Virus record (IMG/VR): IMGVR_UViG_3300032931_001151
Location: 124,001 to 188,000 of that record
DNA length: 64,000 nucleotides
Strand: one strand, 5' to 3'
In this document: one piece after another, positions 35,212 to 56,152 of the stretch
Layout of the letters: every line of letters begins with the position of its first letter
Numbering within the stretch: position 1 is the stretch's first letter
Program-made: the position numbers and the translations under genes
The notes under the pieces: model-generated
What the model saw: the letters and a program-made list of their open reading frames with translations, nothing else
Databases searched by the model: none
Told to the model about the DNA's origin: nothing

Positions 35212-36728
35212 GTCTAATTAGCAAAGATATATACATCGTAAAACTCAATAACGTTTGGGGTCAAATTTCATGTGAAGACTATGAAGTTATTGAAGGTGCA
35301 TATCAACAATTTGGTTTATTTGCAGATGGATATTTCTTTGATAAAAGATATAAGGCTGGTATATGGGATGGAAAGGTTCGAGGAGTTAGAAGAGATGGAA
35401 CGTTCTATCTTGGATTATATAAAGAAGTTAAAGACTATCTTGAAAAACAATCAGAATATTCATTACAAATAGATCCAAAGTTTATTTCTACCATTGAAGA
35501 TAAAGAAGAGTTAAAAGATGACTTAGTGATAGTTACTAATAAGATGTTAGATTCTGTTAAATGTGATCTCTCTCCTAGATATTATCAATGGCGGGCCGCA
35601 CTTAAGGCATATTATTATAAAAGAATGATAGTAGAGCATTGTACTAGTGCGGGTAAGTCATTAACTATTGCTATTATAATAAATTACATATTACATAAAA
35701 ATCCAAATTTTAAAATATTAATATTAGTCCCAAGGCTTGATCTTGTTGAACAAATGACCGAAGATTATACTAAATATGGAATTGATCCTAGTAAAATGGG
35801 AAAATTTACCGGAGAATTTAAAGATTTTAATGAACAAATAATAGTTAGTACTTGGCAAAGCATGAACTCTCAAAAATTTCTTTTGGGTAAATTTAATGCT
35901 ATTATAGCTGACGAATGTCACTCTTTAAAAGCTTCCGTAGTTAGATCGGTTGCGGAAGATGCTATTAATGCTGAGTATCGGATAGGAATGACTGGTACTA
36001 TGCCTGATCCGCCGGCAGAGCAAATGCTAATTAAAGGAGTTTTAGGTTTCGTCGGTGATATAGTTAAAGTAGCCGAATTGGCCGAACAAAAAATGATTGC
36101 GATACCGAAAATACATATACCTTATTTGAAATACTCTAAAGAAGATGTTAAGTCTATAGTGTCAGCACAAAAGAATCTTGAAGGAAGAGACGCTTATAGG
36201 TTTGAACAAGAGTTTTTATTTAATCACGATAAAAGAAATGAATTAATTTATAAAATAACTAAAAAGTTCATTCAACGAAAGCAAAATATTCTTATATTAG
36301 TTTCTAAACATGACCATTGTGAAAAAATTAAAGAAAAGTTAATGAGTAGGGGTATTATACCACTAGTAGTCACGGGCGAATTAAAAGATATGGGTGAAAG
36401 AAATAGAATTAGAAAATCATTAGAAGATGAAGGCGGGCAAGTCATATTAGCAACGGTTGGCGTTTATTCAACCGGTATTTCAATTAAGAGACTACATGCT
36501 ATAATATTTGCGGCGGCAGGTAAAAGTAAAATCCAAACATTACAATCTGTTGGTAGAGGTCTTAGACTAGATAAGAGGAATGACAAAACTCAATTATACC
36601 TTTACGACTTTGCCGATGATTTGAAATATTCTAATGACGGGTTAACAACCCGAATGGAATATTATGCTAGAAATGAGTTTAATGTTAAAATTAAGGAAAT
36701 AGATCTTTATGCCGAAATTCCAGAATAA
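35208..36728 (+). CDS. uvsW: SF2 helicase UvsW
   Basis: 'WDGK', 'TSAGKS', 'STWQS', 'DECH', 'GMTGT', 'LQSVGRGLR'. Confidence 0.93.
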   Translation: MSLISKDIYIVKLNNVWGQISCEDYEVIEGAYQQFGLFADGYFFDKRYKAGIWDGKVRGVRRDGTFYLGLYKEVKDYLEKQSEYSLQIDPKFISTIEDKEELKDDLVIVTNKMLDSVKCDLSPRYYQWRAALKAYYYKRMIVEHCTSAGKSLTIAIIINYILHKNPNFKILILVPRLDLVEQMTEDYTKYGIDPSKMGKFTGEFKDFNEQIIVSTWQSMNSQKFLLGKFNAIIADECHSLKASVVRSVAEDAINAEYRIGMTGTMPDPPAEQMLIKGVLGFVGDIVKVAELAEQKMIAIPKIHIPYLKYSKEDVKSIVSAQKNLEGRDAYRFEQEFLFNHDKRNELIYKITKKFIQRKQNILILVSKHDHCEKIKEKLMSRGIIPLVVTGELKDMGERNRIRKSLEDEGGQVILATVGVYSTGISIKRLHAIIFAAAGKSKIQTLQSVGRGLRLDKRNDKTQLYLYDFADDLKYSNDGLTTRMEYYARNEFNVKIKEIDLYAEIPE

Positions 36729-38553
36729 TAGTAAAAAAAGGATAGATATTATATATCAAGGAAGAAAGATAGTAATTCCAATTGGCGGATTTATTGAAGG
36801 ACCGCCACATTTAAAATTATATAAGGGACTTGAATTATGTATAGATGCTACTAATAAGGTAGCACTCAACTCCTCCAAAAAAATAGAGTCAACTTTAGAT
36901 ATAAACCAAGAGAATATAAACAACATAAATAAAACAATTCAATATATTAGCGATTATACGACTCTACCATCTATATCTATTTGTATATTAACAAAGAATA
37001 AATTACATTTTATCTCCGATTGCATAAATTCTATTCTTGATAAAGTTAAATATCCTAATACAAAAATATTGTTATTTGATACTGGAACAACCGAGCAAGA
37101 AGTTTTAAATTATTATAAAACACTTTCTAATACAAGAATACCTATTATTATTCATAATATAGGAAAATATCATTTTTCAACAAATTACAACGATGGAATA
37201 TTTAAATGCGTTGATACTGATTATTGTCTAATTCAAAATAATGATACTATTGCGTTGAATGATTACGTTAGTAAATTAATGAAAATTTCTATTATTGAAA
37301 AAGTGGGTGCTTGTGGACCTAGAATGTTATATAAAAATGGCACTATACAACACGACGGTCAATATATGTTTAACCATCAAGTAGGATCCGGATTTGTTAA
37401 TCCAGGCCATTTAGGAATGGGAAAATTACCATCTGAAGTTGGAGGAGGTAGACATCTAGTTGATGGCATAACTGCGGCAGGTCAACTTGTTAGAACTAAA
37501 TTATTTAAGAAATTAGGAGGATTTAATACTAATTTTAAAGACATCTATCAAGATGTCCATTTTAATATGACATTAAGAGGGAATGGATATATTTCTATTT
37601 GTGATAGAGATGCGGTAATTAATCACTATGACAATTCTTCTCGTAAAGATTCGTTTCATATACAGGAAGAAGTTGCAAAGATGTGGAAAGATAGTAACTA
37701 TCTATTCCATGAATTAATCCCTCGTGATGGCACATTACGGAATTTTAAAAGAAAAACGCCAATATTTAGCATTATTACATTAGTAAACGATAAAAAACAA
37801 TATATTGATTTTCTAGAAGATCTAAAAAATCAAAAATTTAATGGAATATTTGAAGTAATAGCCTTGCCAAATTTTAATGACGAATATAAAAGTGCAGCGG
37901 AAGCACTTAATGTTGGTAAAGATATAGCAGAAGGTGACTATGTAATGTATTGTCATCAAGATTTAAAAGTTCCATGTGATTGGCTTCTAAAAATATCAAA
38001 TAATATAAACTCATTAAATATGAAATCTATTGGGTTTCTTGGAATGGCTGGAGTTCTTTACAAAGAAGAAAATAATAAAAAGCAAGATGCTGCCATATTT
38101 CTTTCTAATTTAAATAGCAATAAACAAAAATTGTCGGATTACTATATGAAATTAGTGGGAGACAAACTTGAAGTTCAATGTTTAGACGAATTATGTATTA
38201 TAGGGTCTAGATCTGACCGCTATAGATTTGATGAGATTAATTTTGATCACTATCATTGGTATGGAGCCGACATATGCTTACAAGCATTGGTAGATAGTAG
38301 AAAGAATTATGCCATTAATGCCGAATGCTATCATTTATCCAATGGAGTATCCAATTTCAATAGAAGTGGGCATAGTGAAAAATATATAGAAGGTTCAAAA
38401 AAACTATATATTAAGTGGACACCTAAAATAAGTGAATTTAGAACAACTACCGCAACGTTCATTAAATCTACGAAAACTATTAAATTTTTAGTATATAAAG
38501 TATTACCAAATGAATTAAAAAAGAATTTTATTGAAACAATCTTAATGACTTGA
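36709..38553 (+). CDS. Two-domain GT-A (GT2) glycosyltransferase; first domain WbbL/rhamnosyltransferase-like
   Basis: Domain 1: 'ISICILTKN', 'LIQNNDT', 'VGACGPRML', 'FKKLGGF...YQDV'. Domain 2: 'FSIITLVN', 'ALNVG', 'YCHQDL', 'HWYGADICLQ'. Confidence 0.8.
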   Translation: MPKFQNNSKKRIDIIYQGRKIVIPIGGFIEGPPHLKLYKGLELCIDATNKVALNSSKKIESTLDINQENINNINKTIQYISDYTTLPSISICILTKNKLHFISDCINSILDKVKYPNTKILLFDTGTTEQEVLNYYKTLSNTRIPIIIHNIGKYHFSTNYNDGIFKCVDTDYCLIQNNDTIALNDYVSKLMKISIIEKVGACGPRMLYKNGTIQHDGQYMFNHQVGSGFVNPGHLGMGKLPSEVGGGRHLVDGITAAGQLVRTKLFKKLGGFNTNFKDIYQDVHFNMTLRGNGYISICDRDAVINHYDNSSRKDSFHIQEEVAKMWKDSNYLFHELIPRDGTLRNFKRKTPIFSIITLVNDKKQYIDFLEDLKNQKFNGIFEVIALPNFNDEYKSAAEALNVGKDIAEGDYVMYCHQDLKVPCDWLLKISNNINSLNMKSIGFLGMAGVLYKEENNKKQDAAIFLSNLNSNKQKLSDYYMKLVGDKLEVQCLDELCIIGSRSDRYRFDEINFDHYHWYGADICLQALVDSRKNYAINAECYHLSNGVSNFNRSGHSEKYIEGSKKLYIKWTPKISEFRTTTATFIKSTKTIKFLVYKVLPNELKKNFIETILMT

Positions 38554-38563
38554 AAGAATTATG

Positions 38564-38592
38564 TTGAAGAATATGTTTTTGGATTGTATAAT
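38564..38592 (+). promoter_or_regulatory. Sigma70-type promoter facing a long non-coding region
   Basis: TTGAAG-N17-TATAAT. Confidence 0.65.
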
Positions 38593-38597
38593 GAATA

Positions 38598-39110
38598 GGT
38601 CGCTCTTTAAAACTATCTTATCTAATGGAGATATAAAAGTACATTAGAGATTTTTAGACATCATTTTTATTAAAATGATTCCACGATGCTACATATAAGG
38701 TTATTATTATCCTTATATTCTGGAGAGAAGGGTTGGAGATCCTGTAGTATGGTACGCTAGTGATAGTCTACCCAACAAATTGCTTTGACGGTAATCATAT
38801 AGTTTAATTGATTACTAACACGCAAAAAAAATAAATTATACATAAAACTAATCAAAGTATAACTCCGCAACTTAGGAGTTTATTACCTCTACTTAAGCTA
38901 AAATCTTCTTTAGTGGCTACTAATTAACCAAAGTGGTGGAAGTAACTAAAAAGAAATAAAAGTTCGTGTAACTTGAAATAACTAGTAAAAAGCCTTCTTA
39001 AAAGAAAATGTAAATAAAATAACACGGAAGGATTTTAAGGAAGAATTGTTTTTAATTTTGTTTTATATAATAGATAATAAAAAACCACCATATTGTGTAT
39101 GGTGGTTTAA
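38598..39110 (+). ncRNA. Candidate structured non-coding RNA (or transcription-activated origin)
   Basis: About 510 nt without a credible ORF, downstream of a promoter, with multiple hairpins; family not recognised. Confidence 0.35.
39082..39108. terminator. Terminator hairpin (best U-tract on the minus strand; possibly bidirectional)
   Basis: AAACCACCATA/TATGGTGGTTT stem. Confidence 0.75.
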
Positions 39111-39131
39111 TTTAATAAATATGTTAATGTA

Positions 39132-40952
39132 TTATATAATTTTATCTATTGAAGTAAATTCATTCTTTTTAATTAAATGTATAATACTATCAAATATTTC
39201 TTCACCCAGTTCTTTTTTATGTGAAATAATGTAAATACATTTATCAGGACAATTAGTTTTAAATCCATTCTTTAAATGCTCTAAAAATGATTCGGCTCCT
39301 ACGGTATCCAATGATGTATCAAGTACTTCATCAAGTACTAATATATTTGTATCAATTGAATTTCTCTCTTTTGATACATCCATTAAAGCAAGAAGTAATG
39401 CTAAATCTATTCTTTTCTTTTCTCCACCAGAAAACGACTCGTATGATCTTATATCTTTATTTCTTGCTATTAATTTTTCTTTTAGTTCACTATCAAACGT
39501 AATAGTATAATCGGAACCTAACATTGATAAGTAAAAATTAACTTTTTTGTTCAAAATAGGTAATACTTTCATCGTTACATATTTTCTTACACCATCTTCT
39601 CCAAGTAAACCTCTAATAAATTTATTGTACTTAAAGTCTTTTTGGGCAATATTAAATTTTTCTTCGGCTAATTTAACTAAATTTTCTAATTTATTATATT
39701 CTTGTTGGGATATAATCTCTTTTATTTCAAGTTTTCTTTTAATTTCTCTTTCTAAGTTATCATTAGAATTTTTAATTGACATTTCTAATTCACGAATTTT
39801 ATTTTTAGCCATTCGTAATTTATCAACATTATCTTCAAGTTTTGAAATTTTTTCTGTTATTAATTTTGAATTTGTATAACATTCGTTAATAAATGTAGTA
39901 TATTCATTAATTTTTTTATTTAAGTCGTTAACTTTAAGTTTTAAATTATTAACATATTCGGTAATTAATGGATTATTGGTTGAAGTTTGGCATAGCGGAC
40001 AATGTTCCGTATGTTCAAGTTTAGCCAATACACTATTATTCATTTTTATTTCTGTTTCTAATTTTGATTTATCATTAATATAACCATTTCGTTTAATTGT
40101 AATATCATTAAGTTCTTTCTTCAATGTATGAAGTAAATCATCAAAATTGACATCTTTAATTTTTTCTTCTATCTTATTTTTATTAATTTCAAATGATTGT
40201 ATTTCATCTTTTAAATCTTGAATTCTTTTTTGTTTATCCGTTTCAAACTTCAAAGTTTCAATAAGCAATGACTCTCTTCTATCTTTAGTTAAAGAAAGAG
40301 TATTAACCGCATTCTTTAGATCATTTTCAAGTACTGTTATATCACTTTTGGCATTTAGATGTTTAGTTTTAGCCTTATCACTCATTCTTCCATAGATTGA
40401 AAGAGATAGAATGTCTTCTAACACCGATCTTTTAGATGCAGGATCCATACTTAAAAATGGTACAGAGTGGTTTACATTTAAAATAATCATATTAGTGAAG
40501 CAAGTAAAACTAATTTTTATTTTTTCTTCAAGTAACGATTGGGTGTGTTTAATACTGTCCAATTGAATTTCATTGTCATCTTCCCAAACATCTGGGTTAA
40601 TTTCCCAATCCTTTATATCCTTTTCCCAAATTTTCAATAAATTCGGTTTAATTCCTCTTTCGATTTTATAAGCTTTATCTCCAATTTTGAAAGTTCCACT
40701 TAATAAACATCCATCACCATTTGTAGTATTAATAATTTCATCTTTATTAATATTTCTTAATGTTTTACCATAAAGTAAGTATGTTAACGATTCGGCTAAT
40801 AAAGTAGTTTTACCAATACCATTTCTTATAGTAGTATTTGGGACTAAATTGCCGGTTACAGCATGTATTCCCGGAGTATATTTGAAGGTTGTTGGAATAT
40901 TTCCAAAAGATAGAAAGTTTTGGATAGTTATATCAATGAACTCTAATTTCAT
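39132..40952 (-). CDS. gp46: Recombination endonuclease subunit gp46 (Rad50/SbcC-like)
   Basis: 'QNFLSFGN', Walker A 'NGIGKT', zinc hook 'CPLC', 'FSGGEK', 'LDEVLD'. Confidence 0.95.
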   Translation of the reverse strand: MKLEFIDITIQNFLSFGNIPTTFKYTPGIHAVTGNLVPNTTIRNGIGKTTLLAESLTYLLYGKTLRNINKDEIINTTNGDGCLLSGTFKIGDKAYKIERGIKPNLLKIWEKDIKDWEINPDVWEDDNEIQLDSIKHTQSLLEEKIKISFTCFTNMIILNVNHSVPFLSMDPASKRSVLEDILSLSIYGRMSDKAKTKHLNAKSDITVLENDLKNAVNTLSLTKDRRESLLIETLKFETDKQKRIQDLKDEIQSFEINKNKIEEKIKDVNFDDLLHTLKKELNDITIKRNGYINDKSKLETEIKMNNSVLAKLEHTEHCPLCQTSTNNPLITEYVNNLKLKVNDLNKKINEYTTFINECYTNSKLITEKISKLEDNVDKLRMAKNKIRELEMSIKNSNDNLEREIKRKLEIKEIISQQEYNKLENLVKLAEEKFNIAQKDFKYNKFIRGLLGEDGVRKYVTMKVLPILNKKVNFYLSMLGSDYTITFDSELKEKLIARNKDIRSYESFSGGEKKRIDLALLLALMDVSKERNSIDTNILVLDEVLDTSLDTVGAESFLEHLKNGFKTNCPDKCIYIISHKKELGEEIFDSIIHLIKKNEFTSIDKII

Positions 40953-42102: not shown

Positions 42103-42558
42103 TTAAAGGTCTTCGGCAATAGAAAATGATAATTTTTGAAGAGATACTTTATCTTGATTTTTAATTAAGGCGTCTTTAACCTTACTTTGATGTTTCTCTT
42201 TGTACATAACTTGAATAAATGCTCTTACTATTATAGTAGTACAGTAGCTAAAAGCATCGGTTGGTTTTCCCTCTCTCGTTTTTCTAGTTGGATCGTAATT
42301 ATGACTATATTTTAGAAGATGTAATAGAGCCGTCCCTTCCATATCAGATTTATACGTATAGTCTTTAAAATTATGGGCACTTGATACTCTAGATACATGT
42401 AACATGAATAATTCACCAAGTCTATCGGTGGCTTTACCAGTTTTAGTATATTTTATCAATTCATTAGAATATTCGTCTTTATCAATATAATACCGTGATT
42501 CGTCAGAGAACGTTCTTCTTTTTCTTAGAATAATTCTCTTCTTTTCTTTTTTGGACAT
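42103..42558 (-). CDS. gp55: Late transcription sigma factor gp55
   Basis: 'NFKDYTYKSDM', 'KYSHNYDP', 'AFSYCTTIIVRAF...KEK'; synteny 55-47-46. Confidence 0.88.
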   Translation of the reverse strand: MSKKEKKRIILRKRRTFSDESRYYIDKDEYSNELIKYTKTGKATDRLGELFMLHVSRVSSAHNFKDYTYKSDMEGTALLHLLKYSHNYDPTRKTREGKPTDAFSYCTTIIVRAFIQVMYKEKHQSKVKDALIKNQDKVSLQKLSFSIAEDL

Positions 42559-42682: not shown

Positions 42683-43726
42683 ATGACTACTCAAAATCAA
42701 CCTGATAAAAATATTGTTAACTTTCCATCAGACAAGAATGGGTGTGGATATTATAGAACATTTATACCCTATGGCTATTTAGCTTGTAAATATAATTATA
42801 ATGTTACGAACCTAATGGAATTCGTATTTGATTTAAATTTTATAGCAAGATCGCAATCTATAAGATTTCAACGTCAAGTAACAGAAGCACAAAAGAAAGT
42901 AGTTTTTGAGTATAAAAAAGTAATTCAACGAGTTGGCGCAAAAACTAAGTTAATTTACGAGATTGACGATAATGTACATGAAATTATGCCGTCCAATATA
43001 GTAGCATATCAATTCTACACCGAGACGAAAAAGAATAATATGCTTCAGATTATGAGGAATGTTGATAAAGTAACCTTTAGTACACAATTCCTTAAAGATT
43101 ATTACAAAGAGAGATTTGGCATTGAAAATTCTATAGTTGTTCCAAATTATCTACCAAAATTCCTTTGGGGTGGAGCCGGTAAGAGAGATAAGTACAAAAA
43201 AGGATCAAAGCCAAGAATTTTATGGGCAGGTTCCGCCTCGCACGTAGGAAAAGGGGGAGATTTAGAATTCTTATTACCTTTAATTAAGAAGACGAAGGAT
43301 GAGTTTGAATGGGTATTCTTTGGTGTAATTCCCCCAGAATTAACTGGTCAATTTGAATTCCACAATTGGTCGGATTTTTATTCTTATCCCGCCGCACTAG
43401 ACGCTATTAATGCGGATATAGCTTTAGCTCCAATTTGTGATAATGCTTTCAATTATGGAAAATCCGATTTGAAATTGCTTGAATATGCGGCATTAGGTCT
43501 TCCCGGAGTATACTCATCAATAGGTGATGGTCTAGGCCCATACGATCTAGTTGAAGGTATTCCATGTGTTAAAAATAATATGGATGAGTGGTATCAAGCT
43601 ATTAAAGGGCTAACTAGCGATCAAGCAAAATGGGATGCGGCACTTCAAGCATCACAAAGAGAATTATCAAAGCGTTGGTTAGAGGATGAGAGTAATATAA
43701 AAGTTTACCACGATGTACATTCTTGA
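42683..43726 (+). CDS. GT-B fold (GT4-like) glycosyltransferase
   Basis: 'GCGYYR', 'YEIDD', 'VVPNYLP', 'ILWAGSASH', 'DIALAP...FNYGKSDLKLLEYAALGLP'. Confidence 0.8.
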   Translation: MTTQNQPDKNIVNFPSDKNGCGYYRTFIPYGYLACKYNYNVTNLMEFVFDLNFIARSQSIRFQRQVTEAQKKVVFEYKKVIQRVGAKTKLIYEIDDNVHEIMPSNIVAYQFYTETKKNNMLQIMRNVDKVTFSTQFLKDYYKERFGIENSIVVPNYLPKFLWGGAGKRDKYKKGSKPRILWAGSASHVGKGGDLEFLLPLIKKTKDEFEWVFFGVIPPELTGQFEFHNWSDFYSYPAALDAINADIALAPICDNAFNYGKSDLKLLEYAALGLPGVYSSIGDGLGPYDLVEGIPCVKNNMDEWYQAIKGLTSDQAKWDAALQASQRELSKRWLEDESNIKVYHDVHS

Positions 43727-50405: not shown

Positions 50406-51833
50406 GTGTCGGACAACAATATTCAATATTATATTTTAAACGGGCTTCTATCAATAGAAGATTATGCGTCTAAATATATTGATAAAATAGATGCCTCGCA
50501 TTTTGCAATAGAAATGCGACCAATTATAAAGGGGATTCAGAAGTTCCATTTAAAGAACTTGAAAATCCCCTCAATTGGCATCCTTATTGATAGAGTTATT
50601 CCAGTAATTACGAAAAATGATCCAGAGCAACAACAAAAATGTGAAGATATAATTCAATCCGCAATGGCTATTGAGTTTAAGAAAAATGACTTTTATGATT
50701 GGTTAAAAACGGAAACTAATGAGTTTATCAAGAAACAACGAGTTATTGATGCTTTGATGAAAGCCGTAGATATTGTAAATAACGGTGACGTGGACGAAGC
50801 CAAAAAACTAATGGATGAGGCTTATCAAATTACATTTGATGATAATCTCGGATTAGATTATTTTGGAAATTTAGAAGATAGAATGAAAAGACTTAAAACT
50901 GGAGCAAACATAATTAATACTGGATTAGAAATACTTAATAATATGATTGGTGGTGGTTGGAGAAATAAGTCATTAATAGTGTTTGGTGCTGGAACTAACG
51001 TAGGTAAAACTCTAATTTTAAGTGATATATCATTTAAGTTAATAAAGCAAGGTCTTAACGGATTATATGTAACTCTTGAAATTTATGAAGATAGTTTGGC
51101 GAATAGAATAGATGCTAATTTATCTAATATTGAATTAAGTGAGTTACCTTCAAATGTTGATTATTTAATGCAAAAAATATTAGAAGAAAAGAAAAACGCC
51201 GAAGCTTCGGGTAATCCGTTTGGAAGATTTATTATCAAAGAATTCCCACCTGGCATTAATTGTAATACTATTCTTTCTACCATTAGAGAATTAAATCTTA
51301 AACAAGGATTTAAACCGGATTTCCTTGTGATAGATTATATTGGATTATTGGCTCCAAATGGAAAAACTGCCGATAATTCTTTTACGGATTTAAAGAAAGT
51401 ATCGGAACAAGTTAGAACTCTATCGTCAATGTTGAATATTCCCGTATTTACCGCCCAACAAACAAATCGTGATAGTTACGGGTTGAGTGAAATCGGACTT
51501 GAATCCACCTCGGAATCAATGGGTATACCTTTTACCGCCGATATTATGATTATGTGTTCACGGACGAAAGATATGGAAGAAGAAAATCAAATGTATTGGT
51601 ATATAGCCAAGAGTAGATTTAGTAAAAATAACGTTGGATTCTTTGTAAATGTTGAATATCCATATATGAGAATATCTGAAACTAACGTATCTATCCAAAA
51701 TATATCCCAAAATGTATCTACAAAACCCAAGGCTGAAAAAAGAAAAGTTGAAGTAAACTTTTCTTCTCATTCCCCAAATATTAGCGGAGGCATAGATGAA
51801 ACCGAAGAATGGACAAAGACAATTAACTTATGA
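50406..51833 (+). CDS. gp41: Replicative DnaB-like helicase gp41
   Basis: 'AGTNVGKT', 'YVTLE', 'IIKEFP', 'VIDYIGL', 'TAQQTNR', 'SESMG', 'KSRF'. Confidence 0.93.
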   Translation: MSDNNIQYYILNGLLSIEDYASKYIDKIDASHFAIEMRPIIKGIQKFHLKNLKIPSIGILIDRVIPVITKNDPEQQQKCEDIIQSAMAIEFKKNDFYDWLKTETNEFIKKQRVIDALMKAVDIVNNGDVDEAKKLMDEAYQITFDDNLGLDYFGNLEDRMKRLKTGANIINTGLEILNNMIGGGWRNKSLIVFGAGTNVGKTLILSDISFKLIKQGLNGLYVTLEIYEDSLANRIDANLSNIELSELPSNVDYLMQKILEEKKNAEASGNPFGRFIIKEFPPGINCNTILSTIRELNLKQGFKPDFLVIDYIGLLAPNGKTADNSFTDLKKVSEQVRTLSSMLNIPVFTAQQTNRDSYGLSEIGLESTSESMGIPFTADIMIMCSRTKDMEEENQMYWYIAKSRFSKNNVGFFVNVEYPYMRISETNVSIQNISQNVSTKPKAEKRKVEVNFSSHSPNISGGIDETEEWTKTINL

Positions 51834-52086
51834 CGAAATAGCTCGTAAGTACGATATGACCCCCGCCAAAGCACATTCGGTGGTCAAACAAGCATACAAT
51901 AAAATGGTCAAAGCATTGATAGAAAGAGAAAAAATAAATATTTTTGATGCAATTTTAGCACTTCGAGAATATTTTAATATGTCAGAGCAAGAAGCATATG
52001 ATAAACTAACCGACGAACATAAAGAATTATTAAAAGAATATGCTATAAAAGAGTTTGATATAAGATCAAAGAAAGGCAAGGCGTAA
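51796..52086 (+). CDS. Late transcription co-activator gp33-like with N-terminal sigma4-like HTH
   Basis: C-terminal half 'INIFDAILALREYFNMSEQEAYDKLTDEHKELLKEYA' is gp33-like; T4 synteny 33-59-32; SD GGAGG. Confidence 0.55.
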   Translation: MKPKNGQRQLTYDEIARKYDMTPAKAHSVVKQAYNKMVKALIEREKINIFDAILALREYFNMSEQEAYDKLTDEHKELLKEYAIKEFDIRSKKGKA

Positions 52087-52087
52087 A

Positions 52088-52678
52088 GTGATTCCGCACG
52101 ATCTATTTAAATTATGCATGGGGTGTTTACATAGATCGTGTGGCACTACTATACAAGATTTTAACGAGTCTAAACATTATAATTTTTTTAATATGCTACT
52201 TAAATATTTTAAAAATGAATTGAAGTTTAATAGTATACAAATAAGACAATATGTAACGGTATTAGCCAAAATACATGAAAATAGTTTTGACCCTTGGAAG
52301 TTAGATTCTCAAGAATACTTTAATGATTTTAAGGCTTGGTATAAAGTCAACTCCTCTAAAGATGCTTACTTAAATAATGTTAAAGAAAGCGTTAAGACCA
52401 TAATAAAATTTTGTAAAACGAAAAAAATAAAAAAGTTAGAAGACTATGTAAAGAATTGGGGTGTAACACATTATATCTCCGGAGTGCTTAACGAAAACGT
52501 CGCATATGCAATAGGTTTACATGAACTTACTCTATCTAAACCTGAAAAATTTATGGTAAAAAGATTTTTGAAGAATGTTCCAATGATAAAAGAGAGACTT
52601 GAGAGAGAAGGTCGCTTAAAAGTATTATTAGAAGATGAAATAAAACAAGCCAAAGAAATGTTGATTTGGATTTCTTGA
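52088..52678 (+). CDS. Helicase loader gp59-like
   Basis: Size and position between the gp33-like gene and gp32; weak sequence support. Confidence 0.45.
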   Translation: MIPHDLFKLCMGCLHRSCGTTIQDFNESKHYNFFNMLLKYFKNELKFNSIQIRQYVTVLAKIHENSFDPWKLDSQEYFNDFKAWYKVNSSKDAYLNNVKESVKTIIKFCKTKKIKKLEDYVKNWGVTHYISGVLNENVAYAIGLHELTLSKPEKFMVKRFLKNVPMIKERLEREGRLKVLLEDEIKQAKEMLIWIS

Positions 52679-52689
52679 CTTGCTATAAT
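52661..52689 (+). promoter_or_regulatory. Promoter for gp32
   Basis: TTGATT-N17-TATAAT with extended TG. Confidence 0.7.
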
Positions 52690-52778
52690 AAATAAAGAAT
52701 GAGTTGGGAATGTTTCCCGATTTCTATATCTAGTTAGAAGTATCTAACGTATCCAATATATCCCAAAAGGAAATATCC

Positions 52779-53756
52779 ATGTCAAAATTCGACACATTAT
52801 CCCAAAACACTAAATTTGAAGAACTTCGCCAGAAACTTCAAAAGCAACGCACCGATGCTGAAAATAAAAAGAACGGTGGGACTACCCGAGATGATACTTG
52901 GAAGTTTCTTCCCGAGCTTCCAGCCGATAAGCCAAGTGCAAAATACACACTAAGAATTCTACCAAATCGCCACGATATGGAATCGTCATATCCTTGGATT
53001 GATGGTTATTTCCATATGTTCCGTAGAAGCGATGGTAAGTTCATCTATACTATGTGTCCTACTACGGTGGACGAAAAAGCCCCATGTCCAATTTGTGAAA
53101 AAGCTAAAAAACTATTCGCAACTAAAGATAAAGCAGACGAGGATGCCGCTTTTAAACTCTATAGAAAACAACGCTTCTTCGTTAACGTTTACGTAAAAGC
53201 GGATCCGAGAGTTGGCGAAACCAATCAAGCAGGTAAAGTCGTTGTATACGAATTTGGTAAGAAATTATTTGATAAGTTCTCGGATGCTATTCTTGAGCAA
53301 CAACTTGAAATTGTTAATACTTTAAACGGACACGATTTCATGCTTGTACTTAAGAAACAAGGCGAATATACAAACTATGATAGTTCGCTATTCGTTGCTA
53401 AAGAAAGTGTAGTCCATGAAGAGGAAGAAGAGTTGAATAAGATTTATGATTCGATAATTAATCTTAAAGAGAAAGTTATAGGTCGTGGACCGCAAACTTA
53501 CGAGAAACTTCAAGAGATGCTTACTGGTCAACCCGCTAATGGGGCTTCAGTATCAAATGCTCCTAAAGTTTCAATTACGAGTGATTCGGCTAAAGGTGGA
53601 GCAAAGGTAATTGAAAAGCCATCAGAAGGGGTAGTTCCCGACGAAGCCGCATTCAATGAAGGTCTTGGTGCTAAACCAAAGGTAGAAACGAAAGTAAAAG
53701 CCGATGTCGCTAAAAAGAGCGACGATGACTTTGACTTTGATTTTGATGAAAAGTGA
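52779..53756 (+). CDS. gp32: Single-stranded DNA-binding protein gp32
   Basis: 'LRILP', 'CPTT...CPIC', 'GKVVVYEFGKKLFDK', 'NYDSS'; acidic/aromatic C-terminal tail. Confidence 0.93.
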   Translation: MSKFDTLSQNTKFEELRQKLQKQRTDAENKKNGGTTRDDTWKFLPELPADKPSAKYTLRILPNRHDMESSYPWIDGYFHMFRRSDGKFIYTMCPTTVDEKAPCPICEKAKKLFATKDKADEDAAFKLYRKQRFFVNVYVKADPRVGETNQAGKVVVYEFGKKLFDKFSDAILEQQLEIVNTLNGHDFMLVLKKQGEYTNYDSSLFVAKESVVHEEEEELNKIYDSIINLKEKVIGRGPQTYEKLQEMLTGQPANGASVSNAPKVSITSDSAKGGAKVIEKPSEGVVPDEAAFNEGLGAKPKVETKVKADVAKKSDDDFDFDFDEK

Positions 53757-53826: not shown

Positions 53827-54852
53827 ATGGATAAAGTTTTAATATTGACTGGAATGGCCGGATTTATAGGAATGAATGTATTAAAAGAAATGGCAAAAGA
53901 TGAAAATTTTATAAAATCATATAAAGATGTAATTTCTATAGATAAAATGGGATATGCTACCAAATATAACGATGCCGAATATAAAAAAATATGCGATTTG
54001 CATTGTATTAATATAATTAACATAAATATTAACGATTTACCTAAATCTAAATATAAATTAGAATATAAAGACGTTAAATATGATATTTTAGATATGGCTT
54101 CAGAATCGCATGTTGACAATAGCATACTAGATCCCTTTTCAATATATAATCAAAATACATCAATACCAGCAAAGTTACTTGAGTGGATTGGAAAAGAAAA
54201 TTGGAAAAATATTGGAACATATTACCATATTAGCACTGACGAAATATACTCAGAAATACCTTTAAATAAAGTAAATGATGATAAAAATTGGTTTAAAATC
54301 GATGACTCATTTAAGCCGAACAACCCATATTCAGCGTCAAAGGCGGCACAAGATTGTTTCTTAATAGCAATGAGACATACCTTTGGGTTAAATGTCAAAT
54401 TTATTAGGATGGCGAATCAAGTTGGCACATTCCAACATATAGAAAAAATGGTTCCCGCAAGCACATTAAGAATTTTAAAAGGCGAGGCTATAAAGATTTA
54501 TGGAGAGGGATTAAATGTCCGTCAATGGACCCCTGTTAATGTGACGGCTAAAATAATAGTTGATATATTAAGAGAAAAAGTTATCTTTAATGATATATTA
54601 CACATTGCTTATAGATACGGGATATATAACAATAATGAAATTTCAAATTTGATATCGGAATGCATGTTAGACTTTGGGTATAATGCTAAAATAGAATATA
54701 TTGAAGATAGATTGGGGCATGATTCCGCATACGCATTGGATACAACTCCAATAGTTGATGAATATTTTGAAGAAATAATAAACTTCAAAGACTACTTAAA
54801 ATCAACTATTGAGTTCTATGTTAAAAATAAAGAATTATATTTAGGAAAATAA
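53827..54852 (+). CDS. rmlB: dTDP-glucose 4,6-dehydratase
   Basis: 'GMAGFIG', 'DKMGYA', 'ASESHVDNSI', 'ISTDE', 'YSASK', 'GEGLNVRQW', 'DRLGHD'. Confidence 0.9.
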   Translation: MDKVLILTGMAGFIGMNVLKEMAKDENFIKSYKDVISIDKMGYATKYNDAEYKKICDLHCINIINININDLPKSKYKLEYKDVKYDILDMASESHVDNSILDPFSIYNQNTSIPAKLLEWIGKENWKNIGTYYHISTDEIYSEIPLNKVNDDKNWFKIDDSFKPNNPYSASKAAQDCFLIAMRHTFGLNVKFIRMANQVGTFQHIEKMVPASTLRILKGEAIKIYGEGLNVRQWTPVNVTAKIIVDILREKVIFNDILHIAYRYGIYNNNEISNLISECMLDFGYNAKIEYIEDRLGHDSAYALDTTPIVDEYFEEIINFKDYLKSTIEFYVKNKELYLGK

Positions 54853-54853: not shown

Positions 54854-56152
54854 ATGAAAACCGTAGCACATAAAAATATACATAATTGGTGGGATGGAAA
54901 AGTTATTATTGATGAAGTTAGGGAATATATAGACGATCGAGGATCGTTGACGGAATTGTGGAGAACTGATGACGAGGTAATGTGCGAAGACCCATATTGC
55001 CCGCAAATGTCATATTGGTCAATAACAAAGCCATATGTAATGCGTGGAATGCATCAGCATTCAATGGCTCAATGTGACTGGTTCTATACTTTCAAAAGTA
55101 AAATGGTGTATCAATTATATAACGAAGAAACTAAAGAGATGCGATGCTATTTCACCAATCCTAATGCTATAACAAGAGTTAAAGTGTCGCCCCCTATAAT
55201 TCACGGATATAGATCCCTAGAAAATAGAGATATAGTTACCGCAAATTTCCCATCTTCGCTATTCATGGGGGAGAATAAAAAAGAACCGATTGATGAAATT
55301 AGATGGGAAGATAAATTTAAGGATGTACCCGTAGTCTTCATTTTTGGCGCTAATGGTAGATTGGGTAAAGCTTTAACAAAATCTTTTTTTGATAATATGG
55401 GGTTTTGTACTTATGAGGTAGTTCCATGCTATGAGAAACTTAATAGTGTTGAAGAAGTTTCAAAATTGTTTAAGACACTTGAGGCATTGTTTAAAGGTAG
55501 AAAACTATATTTCTTTAATTGTGCTGCGCTAACAAATGTTCAAGATAAAAATACACTTTTTGATATTTGGGAATGGGCTAATGCTAAAATGCCATCATAT
55601 ATGGCAAACTATTGCGTTGCCAATGATTGGAAATTTATAGGGTTTAGCACGGATTATATATATCAAAATAGCGAAGAAACTAAAAATAATTATACGTTAT
55701 CAAAGAAGTTATTTGAGAAATTAATTGAGACTAATTCAAGAAATGATGGGATATCTATATTAAGAGTAGCAAATCTCTATTCAAAAGACCCTAATGATGT
55801 TCATAATGCCATTATTAAGTTTTGTAATGTTATAAAATCGTGTAAAGAAGCAACTATAGACCCAAAATTAAGTATATTCCCAACAAACGTAGAAATATTA
55901 TCTTTTAAAATTGTTGGATTATTTAAAAATTCATCATTTGATCATATGGATTGCAAGTATTTCAATATAATACCGAAAAAATATAAACTTGATAATTTTA
56001 TATCCACGTTCTTTCCTAACACTCCGATTAAAACTATTGACTCTAAATTAACTCCGTGGGATATAAAATTTGAAACCGATAAAGAGCCAATTAAATTAAA
56101 TATAGGTCAATCGGAAAATGCCATCCAAAATATAATTTCATTAAATAGTTAG
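54854..56152 (+). CDS. rmlCD: Fused dTDP-4-dehydrorhamnose 3,5-epimerase / reductase (RmlC-RmlD)
   Basis: RmlC cupin: 'DDRGSLTELW', 'VMRGMHQH', 'IHGY'. RmlD: 'GANGRLG', 'NCAALTNV', 'STDYIY', 'YTLSK'. Confidence 0.85.
   Translation: MKTVAHKNIHNWWDGKVIIDEVREYIDDRGSLTELWRTDDEVMCEDPYCPQMSYWSITKPYVMRGMHQHSMAQCDWFYTFKSKMVYQLYNEETKEMRCYFTNPNAITRVKVSPPIIHGYRSLENRDIVTANFPSSLFMGENKKEPIDEIRWEDKFKDVPVVFIFGANGRLGKALTKSFFDNMGFCTYEVVPCYEKLNSVEEVSKLFKTLEALFKGRKLYFFNCAALTNVQDKNTLFDIWEWANAKMPSYMANYCVANDWKFIGFSTDYIYQNSEETKNNYTLSKKLFEKLIETNSRNDGISILRVANLYSKDPNDVHNAIIKFCNVIKSCKEATIDPKLSIFPTNVEILSFKIVGLFKNSSFDHMDCKYFNIIPKKYKLDNFISTFFPNTPIKTIDSKLTPWDIKFETDKEPIKLNIGQSENAIQNIISLNS

What the first reader, a model, noticed from the sequence alone, without database searches (positions are those of the whole stretch)
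36709..56152. Phage-encoded rhamnosylation system: rmlB, rmlC-rmlD fusion and three glycosyltransferase domains dispersed among core replication genes
Seen: rmlB and fused rmlCD directly after gp32; a two-domain GT2 overlapping uvsW, with a WbbL/rhamnosyltransferase-like first domain; a GT-B enzyme beside gp55, near where T4 keeps alpha-glucosyltransferase. Neither glycosyltransferase has an obvious TM segment or late promoter. Known: RmlB/C/D convert dTDP-glucose to dTDP-L-rhamnose; rmlA and a dCMP hydroxymethylase are not in this window. Inference: the phage makes a 6-deoxyhexose donor and builds a short glycan on its DNA (a novel hypermodification against restriction/CRISPR), on virion proteins (Ser/Thr/Gly motifs), or on the host surface. 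The acceptor cannot be determined from sequence.
Basis: partly seen in the sequence, partly recalled or inferred. Interest (0 to 1): 0.78.

Follow-up and report, generated by a model that had tools for sequence, protein, structure and literature searches.

The report
Phage-encoded deoxy-sugar and glycan-building gene set
An uncultured T4-like phage, and every relative of it that I could find, carries its own enzymes for making a rhamnose-type sugar and three sugar-adding enzyme domains among its DNA-replication genes, as the fixed core of a larger glycan-building kit whose target (virion, host envelope or DNA) cannot be read from sequence.

Summary
The genes sit at the stated coordinates:
- a two-domain GT2 that overlaps uvsW
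- a GT-B beside gp55
- an RmlB-like dehydratase and a cupin+RmlD-like fusion directly after gp32

None has a TM segment or a T4-type late promoter.

Three corrections or additions:
1. The "RmlC" half is a CapF-type metal cupin, not a canonical RmlC. The product is therefore a 6-deoxyhexose: L-rhamnose is likely but unproven.
2. These four genes are clade core. In every syntenic relative they keep the same positions, and the GT-B is as conserved as the major capsid protein.
3. The window shows only part of the system. Just past its 3' end lie Gmd, Fcl, an RfbH-like enzyme, an amidotransferase and nine more GT genes.

The 214-kb record has no RmlA, thymidylate-synthase homologue, TET/JBP, T4 AGT/BGT family match or polytopic membrane protein. 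Relatives carry canonical-looking ThyA, and some carry RmlA.

The acceptor is unresolved. My estimates are virion proteins 0.4, host lipid-linked envelope glycan 0.3 and DNA 0.15. I call this a new variant of known virus-encoded glycosylation.

The parts
35208..36728 (+). UvsW helicase gene (context). Its 3' end overlaps the GT2 gene by 20 nt. Tight uvsW-GT2 junctions (overlap or 1-nt gap) recur in L005, L007, G002, G003 and G004.
   Evidence: Pfam UvsW_N, ResIII, Helicase_C; junction coordinates
36709..38553 (+). 614-aa soluble protein. It has a small N-terminal beta domain (about 1-45), GT-A domain 1 (about 85-340, WbbL-like) and GT-A domain 2 (about 348-590, Glyco_tranf_2_5, like Rhodobacter ORF6 2nxv).
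   Evidence: Pfam. About 60 full-length homologues at 35-72% identity, all metagenomic or viral. Model pLDDT 90.7. Fold matches to K4CP, PmHS2, pmHAS, WbbL, RfbF and 2nxv.
42103..42558 (-). gp55-like late sigma factor (context), transcribed divergently from the GT-B gene
   Evidence: phrog_234 late sigma transcription factor, E 2.7e-21
42683..43726 (+). 347-aa soluble GT-B (GT4-like) glycosyltransferase. It is the most conserved protein of the region.
   Evidence: phrog_7162. 477 homologues, the best 120 at 47% identity or more. Identity of 92/66/58% against 87/55/49% for the polymerase in L005/L002/L007. 51-57% in G002-G004, about equal to gp23. Model pLDDT 93.8. GT4 fold matches.
52779..53756 (+). 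gp32 single-stranded-DNA-binding protein (context). The RmlB-like gene follows it in every syntenic relative.
   Evidence: Pfam gp32, E 5e-25; gp32-seeded search
53827..54852 (+). RmlB-like NDP-glucose 4,6-dehydratase, 341 aa. Read directly from the translation: GxxGxxG, TDE and YxxxK motifs.
   Evidence: TIGR01181 at 197 bits, under cut-off. PDB RmlB 6bi4, 2hun and 1kep at E 1e-35 to 1e-37, against mimivirus R141 6vlo at 1e-16. Translation. Present in 8 of 8 clade genomes.
54854..56152 (+). 432-aa fusion. N-terminal CapF-type cupin (about 15-150; invariant H67, H69, D75, H117) and C-terminal RmlD-like SDR reductase (about 158-400; invariant S265, D267, Y268, Y280, K284).
   Evidence: Pfam RmlD_sub_bind and PF14667. 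74 homologues. Profile against PDB: RmlD 1vl0 at E 5e-23, Cap5F matched in two stretches. Cupin profile: Cap5F E 4e-6 against RmlC about 0.1. Invariant columns.
56166..57089 (+). Possibly linked, function unknown. A TATAAATA late-promoter motif (56166-56173), a 280-aa lipoprotein-like membrane protein (56195-57037; lipobox, coiled coil, 3 TM) and a terminator hairpin (57060-57089). In G004, L160 and L162 the homologue (51-53% identity) lies between RmlB and RmlCD.

Best explanation
Shown:
- The window holds the conserved core of a phage-encoded cytoplasmic glycan-assembly system.
- It lies in an uncultured clade of large T4-like phages. This record is a 217-kb contig at 33% GC.

Inferred from homology and motifs:
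- The RmlB-like enzyme makes an NDP-4-keto-6-deoxyglucose, most likely from dTDP-glucose. This phage would take dTDP-glucose from the host; several relatives carry their own RmlA.
- The cupin/SDR fusion epimerises and reduces it to a 6-deoxyhexose donor. dTDP-L-rhamnose is the likeliest product. 6-deoxy-L-talose or a 6-deoxy-D-hexose is not excluded.

Inferred from folds:
- The WbbL-like first GT-A domain transfers that sugar.
- The fused second GT-A domain and the GT4-type GT-B add further residues. They build either a short conserved core glycan or, given the tandem-GT-A polymerase-like architecture, a repeat polymer.

Shown as gene content:
- Just past the window's 3' end, after the gp52 topoisomerase gene, lies a strain-variable island with GDP-fucose synthesis, an RfbH-like enzyme, an amidotransferase and nine more GT genes. 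That it decorates the core glycan is inference.

Inferred, about 0.4 on its own:
- The acceptor is a phage-made macromolecule, most likely virion protein(s). Precedents are the capsid glycans of chloroviruses, the fibril glycans of mimiviruses, and the capsid and tail-tube glycans of mycobacteriophages.
- The reason is that the enzymes are soluble, no export machinery is encoded, and the GT-B is held as constant as the capsid protein across hosts that must differ widely.
For: Gene identities:
-.

Clade-wide conservation and synteny:
- L005 (385-kb contig) and L007 (NCBI CACVDL010000001.1, 325 kb).
- IMG/VR relatives G002, G003 and G004 at 35, 28 and 40% GC.
- All five syntenic loci in the gp32-seeded search carry RmlB and GT-B. 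Four carry RmlCD; the fifth, a 12.7-kb contig, ends before that position.
- RmlB-like is present in 8 of 8 genomes, while Gmd/Fcl is in only 3 of 8.
- The GT21-like and GT7C-like island genes are shared with G002 and G003. The rest of the island is not.

Island content:
-.

Solubility and lack of export genes:
- No TM segment in any GT, and no ORF with more than 4 TM in this genome.
- At most 6 TM in any ORF across 708 kb of relatives.

Expression class:
- No late-promoter motif precedes the GT or Rml genes.

Donor pathway:
- RmlA-like genes occur in 4 of 7 relatives, and rmlA is the best NCBIfam model for the two I scanned.

Folds:
- Domain 1 resembles WbbL and RfbF. The whole chain resembles tandem-GT-A polymerases.

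Candidate acceptor tracts in large or late-region ORFs:
- A poly-Ser run of about 25 residues, G-T-S repeats and a Ser/Gly/Ala-rich C-terminus.

Precedents:
- Mycobacteriophage virion glycosylation is cited in PMC12619734.
- The chlorovirus and mimivirus examples rest on my own knowledge.
Against: - No acceptor is identified, and nothing computed here ties the GTs to a virion protein.
- The Ser/Thr-rich proteins are not conserved in G002-G004, whereas the GTs are.
- WbbL-like and GT4 enzymes usually act on undecaprenyl-PP-linked acceptors. Und-PP-GlcNAc is near-universal, so a constant acceptor need not be phage-made.
- The genes lack late-promoter motifs and sit with replication genes rather than with structural genes.
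- A membrane lipoprotein gene travels with the rml genes in some relatives.
- The sugar's identity and nucleotide carrier are inferred. RmlB and RmlD score under the NCBIfam equivalog cut-offs.
- The record is about 90% complete by CheckV, so absences are not absolute.
Confidence: 0.4

Rival explanations
1. Host-envelope remodelling. The soluble GTs work at the inner face of the membrane on host undecaprenyl-PP-linked intermediates. The WbbL-like domain would add the deoxyhexose to Und-PP-GlcNAc. The host's own flippase or ABC transporter and ligase would then put the new glycan on LPS, capsule or glycoproteins. Alternatively the pathway simply ties up Und-P. The effect would be receptor masking, superinfection exclusion or less loss of progeny on debris.
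For: - Fold relatives of domain 1 (WbbL, RfbF) and of the GT-B (PimA, PglA, WclY, WbnH) act on lipid-linked acceptors.
- The tandem GT-A architecture is that of capsule polymerases K4CP, PmHS2 and pmHAS.
- The island's content (Gmd, Fcl, RfbH-like, GT10, NodZ-like, GT2) is typical of O-antigen and capsule loci, and it varies between relatives as serotype loci do.
- A lipoprotein-like membrane protein is linked to the rml genes.
- A cyanophage paper files comparable phage GT sets under cell-wall synthesis and modification (PMC12801897).
Against: - No initiating transferase, flippase, polymerase, ligase or Gtr-type membrane protein is seen. This genome has no ORF above 4 TM, and 708 kb of relatives have none above 6 TM.
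- Genes that alter host surfaces are usually accessory. Here the GT-B is among the five most conserved proteins, equal to gp23, across relatives with 28-40% GC.
- Every syntenic relative found keeps the genes in place.
Confidence: 0.3
2. DNA hypermodification. The GT-B, which sits where T4 keeps alpha-GT, and the GT2 translationally coupled to uvsW would put a deoxyhexose-containing glycan on phage DNA to block restriction and CRISPR. The base would have to be activated by a route not yet described.
For: - The genes are embedded in the replication and recombination module. Junctions with uvsW, gp55 and gp32 are conserved, and no late-promoter motif precedes them.
- Very strong conservation fits a genome-wide protective function.
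- T4 alpha-GT bound to DNA (1y8z, 1y6f) aligns to the GT-B model over about 309 residues at Z 21.7.
- A highly conserved radical-SAM protein of unknown role exists elsewhere in the genome.
Against: - Published glycosylated DNA bases start from a thymidylate-synthase homologue or from C5-MT plus a TET-like 5mYOX (PMC13326640; bioRxiv 10.1101/2023.12.21.572611).
- This record has no PF00303, no PF12851 and no ThyX. TET is absent from all 8 genomes.
- G003 and G004 keep the whole module with only a ThyA that has canonical motifs.
- No Pfam AGT or BGT match.
- Ordinary GT4 enzymes fit the GT-B model better than alpha-GT does (Z up to 25.4), and beta-GT is not among the 50 entries shown.
- Thirteen GT genes, including fucosyl-, sialyl- and galactosyl-transferase-like families, exceed anything reported for DNA glycans.
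- No deoxyhexose or fucose appears in the DNA-GT survey.
Confidence: 0.15
3. Another cytoplasmic acceptor. The conserved GT-B would glycosylate a conserved host protein as a takeover step, in the manner of EarP or toxin glycosyltransferases, or a small molecule or nucleotide. The deoxy-sugar pathway would supply the donor.
For: - A soluble, extremely conserved enzyme whose gene lacks a late-promoter motif.
- The nearest folds include small-molecule GT4 enzymes: MshA, BshA, SenB and LmbT.
Against: - This does not explain three to five conserved GT domains plus a variable island of nine more GT genes.
- The Pfam scan of the GT-B at E up to 0.01 returned only a weak Glyco_trans_1_4 match and no EarP family.
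Confidence: 0.1

Closest known systems
Bacterial dTDP-L-rhamnose pathway (RmlA, RmlB, RmlC, RmlD)
   Same: - RmlB-like dehydratase with the catalytic motifs.
- RmlD-like reductase with the S/T-Y-K triad.
- Cupin epimerase placed directly upstream of the reductase.
- RmlA-like genes in 4 of 7 relatives.
   Different: - No RmlA in this genome.
- The epimerase is fused to the reductase. It is a CapF-type metal-site cupin, not a canonical metal-free RmlC: PF00908 scores only 12.7 bits, and the position aligned by eye to RmlC Lys73 is Asp.
- All scores lie under the NCBIfam equivalog cut-offs.
S. aureus CapF (Cap5F): bifunctional cupin 3-epimerase plus SDR 4-reductase of UDP-L-FucNAc synthesis
   Same: - Two-domain logic, cupin epimerase plus SDR reductase in one chain.
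- Its cupin is the best solved relative of the N-domain (E 4e-6).
- The HxH..acid..H residues are conserved.
   Different: - The domain order is reversed: cupin first here.
- The SDR half is closer to RmlD than to the CapF SDR.
- The upstream dehydratase is RmlB-like, not CapE-like. The substrate is therefore probably a dTDP-4-keto-6-deoxyhexose, not a UDP-2-acetamido sugar.
Virus-encoded glycosylation machineries: chlorovirus capsid glycans (for example the multi-domain rhamnosyltransferase A064R), mimivirus fibril glycans, mycobacteriophage capsid and tail-tube glycans
   Same: - The virus makes its own nucleotide sugars, including a rhamnose-type sugar.
- Many soluble GTs.
- A multi-domain GT.
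- A conserved core plus strain-variable GT genes.
   Different: - No glycan or acceptor has been shown here.
- This is a T4-like phage clade.
- The core genes lie inside the replication module and look early or middle rather than late.
- There is no detectable sequence relationship to those viral GTs beyond the shared fold class.
T4 alpha- and beta-glucosyltransferases, and TET- or TS-linked phage DNA glycosyltransferases
   Same: - A GT-B enzyme next to gp55, as alpha-gt is in T4.
- A fold that superposes on alpha-GT at Z 21.7.
- No late-promoter motif.
- A replication-module setting.
   Different: - No hydroxymethylase, 5hoC synthase, C5-MT/TET pair, AGT family match or BGT family match.
- Generic GT4 enzymes fit better.
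- The donor pathway makes a deoxyhexose, which is not reported on DNA.
Tandem GT-A polysaccharide polymerases (E. coli K4CP, Pasteurella PmHS2 and pmHAS) and WbbL-type rhamnosyltransferases
   Same: - Two GT-A domains in one soluble chain.
- Best whole-chain Foldseek E-values of 7e-18.
- Domain 1 superposes on WbbL at TM 0.64-0.69.
   Different: - Whole-chain TM is only about 0.3, so the domain arrangement differs.
- There is an extra N-terminal beta domain.
- Domain 2 is closest to an uncharacterised Rhodobacter protein (2nxv).
- No transporter partner is encoded.
'Moraphages' (PMC12619734): freshwater jumbo phages with a T4-like core and four core glycosyltransferase orthogroups
   Same: - A large uncultured phage with T4-like structural and replication genes.
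- Several GTs among the core genes.
- The function of those GTs is unknown.
   Different: This genome lacks their hallmark genes: lysyl-tRNA ligase, PhoH and HSP70/DnaK. It is therefore not a member by those markers. That paper does not mention rhamnose.

Membership tests
dTDP-L-rhamnose pathway | RmlA glucose-1-phosphate thymidylyltransferase present | tested here: not met
   PF00483 has no match in the 214-kb record. It is present in 4 of 7 relatives, and rmlA is the best NCBIfam model for the two I scanned, at 172-200 bits.
dTDP-L-rhamnose pathway | RmlB dTDP-glucose 4,6-dehydratase | tested here: met
   TIGR01181 is the best model (197 bits, under the 365 cut-off). PDB RmlB chains match at E 1e-35 to 1e-37. 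GxxGxxG, TDE and YxxxK are visible in the translation. Nucleotide specificity was not tested.
dTDP-L-rhamnose pathway | Canonical RmlC 3,5-epimerase (PF00908; His63, Lys73, Tyr133) | tested here: not met
   PF00908 scores 12.7 bits, E 0.009. The family profile hits RmlC chains only at E about 0.1, against Cap5F at 4e-6. The RGxH motif is kept, but the invariant residue I aligned by eye to Lys73 is Asp75.
dTDP-L-rhamnose pathway | RmlD 4-reductase with the S/T-Y-K triad | tested here: met
   TIGR01214 at 41 bits as a single sequence. The family profile matches 1vl0 and 3sc6 at E 5e-23 and 1e-22. S265, Y280 and K284 are invariant.
CapF-like bifunctional epimerase/reductase | Cupin with an HxH..acid..H metal site, plus an SDR in one chain | tested here: met
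   Cap5F is matched in two stretches. The cupin alignment places H67, H69, D75 and H117 on CapF's H, H, E and H. The domain order is reversed, and metal binding was not tested.
T4-type DNA glucosyltransferases (AGT, BGT) | Sequence membership of Pfam AGT (PF11440) or T4-Gluco-transf (PF09198) | tested here: not met
   No match at E up to 1 in the record.
T4-type DNA glucosyltransferases (AGT, BGT) | Fold specifically closest to AGT or BGT | tested here: inconclusive
   AGT 1y8z and 1y6f reach Z 21.7 and 21.3 at ranks 41 and 48. GT4 enzymes reach up to Z 25.4. BGT is not among the 50 entries shown.
Glycosylated-base DNA hypermodification systems | A partner enzyme that creates the hydroxyl acceptor: TS-family hydroxymethylase or 5hoC synthase, or C5-MT plus TET/5mYOX | tested here: not met
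   PF00303 and PF12851 are absent from the record. TET is absent from all 8 genomes. The ThyA of G003 and G004 has canonical motifs. C5-MT was not searched. The record is about 90% complete.
WbbL-type GT2 rhamnosyltransferase | GT-A fold of the GT2 family that superposes on WbbL | tested here: met
   PF00535, E 7e-14. P9WMY3, P36667 and P37782 cover residues 85-339 at TM by hit 0.57-0.69.
WbbL-type GT2 rhamnosyltransferase | Uses dTDP-beta-L-rhamnose and a GlcNAc-PP-lipid acceptor | not testable with these tools
   Needs enzyme assays.
Tandem GT-A polysaccharide polymerases (K4CP, PmHS2) | Two active GT-A domains in one chain, each with its own acidic motif | tested here: inconclusive
   Best Foldseek E is 7e-18, but TM is about 0.3. 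Invariant D124, N177-N178-D179 and H416-Q417-D418 suggest two sites. Processivity is not testable.
Seroconversion and O-antigen modification modules (GtrABC, Wzx/Wzy type) | Polytopic membrane flippase or transferase encoded by the phage | tested here: not met
   A hydropathy scan finds no ORF with more than 4 TM segments here. The maximum is 6 in 708 kb of relatives.
Moraphages (PMC12619734) | Hallmark core genes: lysyl-tRNA ligase, PhoH, heat-shock DnaK | tested here: not met
   PF00152, PF02562 and PF00012 have no match in the record.

The most novel reading that the evidence does not exclude
The GT-B occupies the position of T4 alpha-GT and shares its fold class. Together with the uvsW-coupled WbbL-like GT, it may decorate the phage's own DNA with a 6-deoxyhexose-containing glycan. 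The base or backbone would be activated by a route that needs neither a thymidylate-synthase homologue nor a TET-like dioxygenase. That would be a new chemistry of DNA hypermodification, fixed in a whole clade of T4-like phages.
Probability: 0.12. Interest if true: 0.95.

Novelty: new variant of a known kind. Interest (0 to 1): 0.62.

Why it matters
If the glycan ends up on virions, this would extend self-encoded virion glycosylation to a widespread, uncultured lineage of T4-like phages. So far that trait is known from giant eukaryotic viruses and a few actinophages. It would bear on adsorption, particle stability and recognition by grazers or host defences.

If the glycan ends up on the host envelope, it would be an unusual case of a surface-remodelling pathway that is core rather than accessory in a lytic phage.

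If it ends up on DNA, it would be a new kind of hypermodification.

In every case the GT-B family (hundreds of metagenomic members, no solved relative detectable by sequence) and the reversed CapF-like fusion are well-defined, expressible targets. Assays on them would settle the question.

Tried and rejected
1. Close cultured relatives. tblastn against 50,697 phage records found none. The polymerase reaches at most 30% identity. The GT-B hits only Streptomyces phage KimJongPhill at 27%. The fusion hits only Citrobacter phage Tr1 RmlD at 24%.
2. Moraphage membership. Rejected, because the hallmark genes are absent.
3. Host inference from the host-like Gmd. The nearest genomes are only 52-61% identical and are spread over many phyla, so this is uninformative.
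4. Public sequencing runs holding the locus, sought for nanopore error signatures or expression data. None was listed.
5. GT2x2 plus GT-B complex prediction. The tool's verdict was 'no answer' (score 0.00), so it is not evidence either way.
6. Sigma-70-type promoter scan. Counts were at shuffle level in the first stretch (68 against 68.4) and only modestly above it in the second (40 against 31.1, sd 5.6). In this AT-rich DNA I take neither as informative. Only the terminators were used.
7. Sequence profile of the GT-B against the PDB. No hit even at E 10. Only fold comparison places the protein.
8. ESM Atlas look-alikes. These confirm a mainly viral GT-B family but add no function.
9. Weak GmaR (flagellin GT) hit to domain 1. 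At 21 bits over 46 residues it is too weak to use.
10. Second GT-B at genome 31.8-32.8 kb and the poly-Ser protein as parts of the core. Rejected, because neither is conserved in G002-G004.
11. Rfam and tRNA scans of the 578-bp ORF-free gap after the GT2 gene. Nothing found.
12. L005 and L007 whole contigs. They are not held for genome-wide searches, so IMG/VR relatives were used instead.

Full report
**What the sequence is**

The window is bases 124001-188000 of a 214.2-kb IMG/VR record. The record was cut from a 217,484-bp JGI metagenome contig (sample 3300032931). It has 32.8% GC and CheckV puts it at about 90% complete.

It is a T4-like myovirus only distantly related to anything cultured. 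Its family-B polymerase is at most 30% identical to any of 50,697 phage records. The sugar genes have no nucleotide match there and almost no protein match.

Window 1-34.3 kb (minus strand) holds gp23 and other ORFs, most without a Pfam match. I read these as late and structural. From 34.7 kb onward (plus strand mostly) lies the replication and recombination module.

**Check of the observation**

| Gene | Coordinates | Main evidence |
|---|---|---|
| uvsW | 35208-36728 | |
| Two-domain GT2, 614 aa | 36709-38553, overlaps uvsW by 20 nt | Glycos_transf_2 at residues 90-214; Glyco_tranf_2_5 at 355-527 |
| gp46 and gp47 | 39132-42033 (-) | |
| gp55 | 42103-42558 (-) | |
| GT-B, 347 aa | 42683-43726 | phrog_7162, E 6e-32 |
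| Polymerase, UvsX, gp41, gp32 | 44774-53756 | |
| RmlB-like | 53827-54852 | TIGR01181 at 197 bits; PDB RmlB E 2e-37 |
| Cupin+RmlD-like fusion, 432 aa | 54854-56152 | |

- No GT or Rml protein has a predicted TM segment. The whole record has no ORF with more than four.
- Twelve of the 15 TATAAATA motifs lie on the minus strand between 6.5 and 34.3 kb, all but two in intergenic spacers upstream of those ORFs.
- In the finding's region there are only two such motifs. One precedes orf480 (49168, minus strand). The other precedes the 280-aa membrane protein (56166).
- Reading TATAAATA as the gp55-dependent late promoter is an inference from T4. The distribution of the motif supports it.

**Correction to the 'rmlC-rmlD fusion'**

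- With a profile of 43 family members, the C-terminal domain is clearly RmlD-like (1vl0 at E 5e-23). S. aureus Cap5F is matched in two stretches.
- A profile of the N-terminal domain alone finds the Cap5F cupin best (E 4e-6). RmlC structures reach only E about 0.1. Pfam's RmlC family scores 12.7 bits.
- Invariant H67, H69, D75 and H117 align with CapF's H-x-H...E...H.
- The position I aligned by eye to the catalytic Lys73 of RmlC is Asp.
- The protein is thus a CapF-like cupin epimerase plus RmlD-like reductase with the domain order reversed.
- Together with an RmlB-type dehydratase, this predicts an NDP-6-deoxyhexose. dTDP-L-rhamnose is the most likely product, but the stereochemistry is not established.
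- The RmlB-like enzyme is much closer to bacterial and archaeal dTDP-glucose dehydratases than to the mimivirus R141 dehydratase, which by my recollection uses UDP-glucose (E 1e-37 against 1e-16).
- Four of seven relatives encode an RmlA-like nucleotidyltransferase. Both points favour a dTDP carrier.
- This genome has no RmlA and would depend on host dTDP-glucose.

**The genes are clade core**

- The GT-B has 477 homologues in the 5.8-billion-protein collection. The best 120 are at least 47% identical, and many sit on contigs of 100-400 kb.
- The GT2x2 has about 60 full-length homologues and the fusion has 74. They come from the same kinds of contigs.
- Neighbourhoods of a close relative (L005, 385-kb contig) and a distant one (L007, NCBI CACVDL010000001.1, 325 kb) show the same order: uvsY, uvsW, GT2, gp46, gp47, gp55, GT-B, pol, uvsX, gp41, gp32, RmlB, RmlCD.
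- I fetched three IMG/VR relatives in full: G002 (332 kb, 35% GC), G003 (198 kb, 28% GC) and G004 (178 kb, 40% GC). All keep these adjacencies, including the tight uvsW-GT2 junction.
- In G004 and L007 the GT2 gene is shorter (480 and 493 aa). Only about 250 residues align, and Pfam sees only the second-domain family in L007.

Identity of the GT-B and the polymerase to this phage's proteins:

| Relative | GT-B | Polymerase |
|---|---|---|
| L005 | 92% | 87% |
| L002 | 66% | 55% |
| L007 | 58% | 49% |
| G002-G004 | 51-57% | 45-51% |

- The 51-57% seen in G002-G004 puts the GT-B among the five best-conserved ORFs of the genome, level with gp23 (57%).
- To avoid ascertainment through the GT itself, I seeded a search with gp32. 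All five loci with syntenic gp32 carry RmlB downstream and the GT-B upstream.
- Four of those five also carry RmlCD. The fifth is a 12.7-kb contig that ends just past the membrane-protein gene, before the RmlCD position.
- More distant gp32 loci lack the GT-B and RmlCD.

**The system is larger than the window**

About 0.9 kb past the window's end, directly after the gp52 topoisomerase gene, the genome encodes the following:
- Gmd (TIGR01472 at 493 bits, over its cut-off)
- an Fcl-like GDP-fucose synthase (420 bits)
- an RfbH/DegT-family PLP enzyme
- eleven minus-strand genes, nine of them GT-like: NodZ-like, GT2, TOD1/MUCI70-like, GT2, GT10 fucosyltransferase-like, two GT7C-like, GT29 sialyltransferase-like and GT21-like
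- the other two minus-strand genes: an AsnB-like amidotransferase and one unknown

A further GT-B lies at genome 31.8-32.8 kb. In all there are about 13 GT genes with 14 GT domains.

In G002 and G003 the GT21-like and GT7C-like genes recur at the same place after gp52. The rest of the island differs. Gmd and Fcl occur in only 3 of 8 genomes, whereas the RmlB-like gene occurs in all 8. The picture is a conserved core plus a variable set of decorating enzymes.

**Folds**

GT-B model (pLDDT 93.8):
- It matches retaining GT4-type enzymes such as MshA, BshA, PimA, PglA and a methylmannose-polysaccharide mannosyltransferase. Foldseek TM is 0.65-0.70 and VIA-align Z reaches 25.4.
- T4 alpha-GT bound to DNA also aligns well (Z 21.7, rank 41), but not better than the generic GT4 enzymes.
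- T4 beta-GT is not among the 50 entries shown.
- The nearest viral models are GTs of uncultured Caudovirales, followed by giant-virus GTs.
- The family profile has no PDB hit by sequence.

GT2x2 model (pLDDT 90.7):
- It has a small N-terminal beta domain and two GT-A domains.
- Whole-chain matches are tandem-GT-A polymerases (K4CP, PmHS2, pmHAS) and M. xanthus RfbC.
- Domain 1 superposes on M. tuberculosis and E. coli WbbL and on Shigella RfbF.
- Domain 2 superposes on the uncharacterised Rhodobacter ORF6 protein.

**What the acceptor might be**

Evidence bearing on DNA:
- All glycosylated DNA bases in the papers I read start from a thymidylate-synthase homologue (hmC, hmU, 5hoC) or from a C5-methyltransferase plus a TET-like dioxygenase (PMC13326640; bioRxiv 10.1101/2023.12.21.572611).
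- This record has no TS-family gene, no ThyX, no TET/JBP and no AGT or BGT family match.
- TET is absent from all eight genomes.
- Six of seven relatives have a TS-family gene. The two highest-scoring ones that I read have canonical ThyA motifs: G003 with LPPCH and PFNIASY, G004 with PANVMSY. G002's main copy is divergent, and G002 also has a second weak homologue.
- Since G003 and G004 keep the whole glyco module with only an ordinary-looking ThyA, the module does not depend on a known base-hydroxylating partner.

Evidence bearing on the host envelope:
- Neither this genome nor 708 kb of relatives encodes a Wzx-, Wzy-, WecA-, WaaL- or Gtr-like polytopic membrane protein.
- The pathway would therefore have to use host machinery.
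- The enzymes' closest functional analogues do act on Und-PP-linked acceptors, and Und-PP-GlcNAc is near-universal. A constant acceptor need not be phage-made.
- A lipoprotein-like membrane protein with its own late-promoter motif follows the fusion gene. In G004, L160 and L162 it lies between RmlB and RmlCD.

Evidence bearing on virions:
- The arguments are indirect. They are capsid-level conservation across hosts that must differ widely, soluble enzymes, the pattern of a conserved core plus variable decoration, and the precedents in giant viruses and mycobacteriophages.
- Ser/Thr-rich tracts exist in large or late-region ORFs.
- Those proteins are not conserved in the distant relatives.

**Judgement**

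I am confident (about 0.85) of three things. The locus is a real 6-deoxyhexose-synthesis and glycan-assembly core, it is conserved across the clade, and it is part of a larger glycosylation apparatus.

The acceptor remains open. My estimates are:
- virion protein(s): 0.4
- host lipid-linked envelope glycan: 0.3
- DNA: 0.15
- another cytoplasmic acceptor: 0.1

**Relation to the literature**

- A 2025 paper on 'moraphages' reports four core GT orthogroups of unknown function in freshwater jumbo phages with a T4-like core (PMC12619734).
- This genome lacks that group's hallmark genes: lysyl-tRNA ligase, PhoH and DnaK. It is a different lineage, and that paper does not mention rhamnose.
- A cyanophage with 13 GTs was described as possibly having the highest number in a marine phage (PMC12801897). 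The count here is similar.
- In the papers I searched I found no description of this conserved uvsW-GT2, gp55-GT-B and gp32-RmlB-fusion arrangement.

**Limits**

- All functions are inferred from homology and predicted folds.
- Absences hold for a record that is about 90% complete.
- Relatives were found in IMG/VR and in protein collections of metagenomes only.
- The complex prediction gave no answer, and no sequencing runs were listed.

Noticed in passing
outside the window: genome 188,895-201,789 (L008:2895-15789): A large glycan island lies right after the gp52 topoisomerase gene. It holds Gmd, Fcl-like, an unknown 300-aa ORF and an RfbH/DegT-like PLP enzyme, then 11 minus-strand genes. Those include NodZ-like, GT10-, GT29-, GT7C-, GT21- and TOD1/MUCI70-like GTs, which are families better known from eukaryotes, and an AsnB-like amidotransferase.
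   Followed up: partly
window 56166-57089: A 280-aa protein with a lipobox signal peptide, a coiled coil and three TM segments has its own TATAAATA motif 22 nt upstream and a terminator after it. Homologues (51-53% identity) lie between RmlB and RmlCD in G004, L160 and L162. Its function is unknown; it could be a lysis, spanin-like or envelope-linked partner.
   Followed up: partly
window 44593-44774: A 10-bp tandem repeat, AAATTATTTA x 8.2 (98% matches), is followed by a strong bidirectional terminator hairpin at 44672-44704. Then comes a small hairpin (AGACGAAACCCCGTCT) just 5' of the polymerase ribosome-binding site. L005 keeps both hairpins but lacks the repeat. The small hairpin may be a gp43-type translational operator.
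   Followed up: partly
window 47652-49175 (-): A 480-aa ORF with no family match and its own TATAAATA motif is inserted on the opposite strand between the polymerase and uvsX. L005 has it at 61% identity. It was not found in L002, L007 or G002-G004.
   Followed up: partly
window 38554-39131: A 578-bp stretch lies between the convergent GT2 and gp46 genes. Its only listed ORFs of 60 aa or more just clip its 3' end. It has no tRNA and no Rfam match at E up to 0.1. A terminator for gp46 lies at 39082-39108.
   Followed up: yes
outside the window: genome 28.2-33.7 kb (L010:6190-11695, minus strand): A radical-SAM protein (323 aa, 57% identical in G002 and G003, among the most conserved ORFs) sits next to a second, non-conserved GT-B. 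A SPASM-domain protein lies nearby. The role is unknown.
   Followed up: partly
genome 121,881-124,019 (-), ending at window base 19; window 691-1077 (-); window 33189-34307 (-): A 712-aa ORF has a run of about 25 serines. A 128-aa ORF has GTSGTSGTSGTSG (collagen-like G-X-Y) repeats. A 372-aa ORF with a late-promoter motif has a Ser/Gly/Ala-rich C-terminus. All are possible glycan acceptor sites, but the 712-aa ORF is not conserved in distant relatives.
   Followed up: partly
window 19997-21352 (-): The 2-kb bin that holds the gp23 major capsid gene has 45.6% GC, against about 33% for the genome. It is the only GC-rich bin in the window.
   Followed up: partly
L007:1174-3866: In the distant relative (NCBI CACVDL010000001.1), uvsW is interrupted by an intein (Hint and Intein_splicing domains), and two small ORFs lie between its two called pieces.
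   Followed up: no
whole record (G000): IMG/VR classes the record as a 'provirus', cut from a 217,484-bp contig to 214,200 bp. The gene content is that of a lytic T4-like phage, so the label is probably an artefact of host-like sugar genes near the contig end.
   Followed up: partly
L172-L177 and L180 (more distant gp32 loci): A different T4-like lineage also carries an RmlB-like gene (31-34% identity) about 5 kb downstream of gp32, but has no GT-B or fusion gene. A dehydratase near gp32 may be older than this clade.
   Followed up: no
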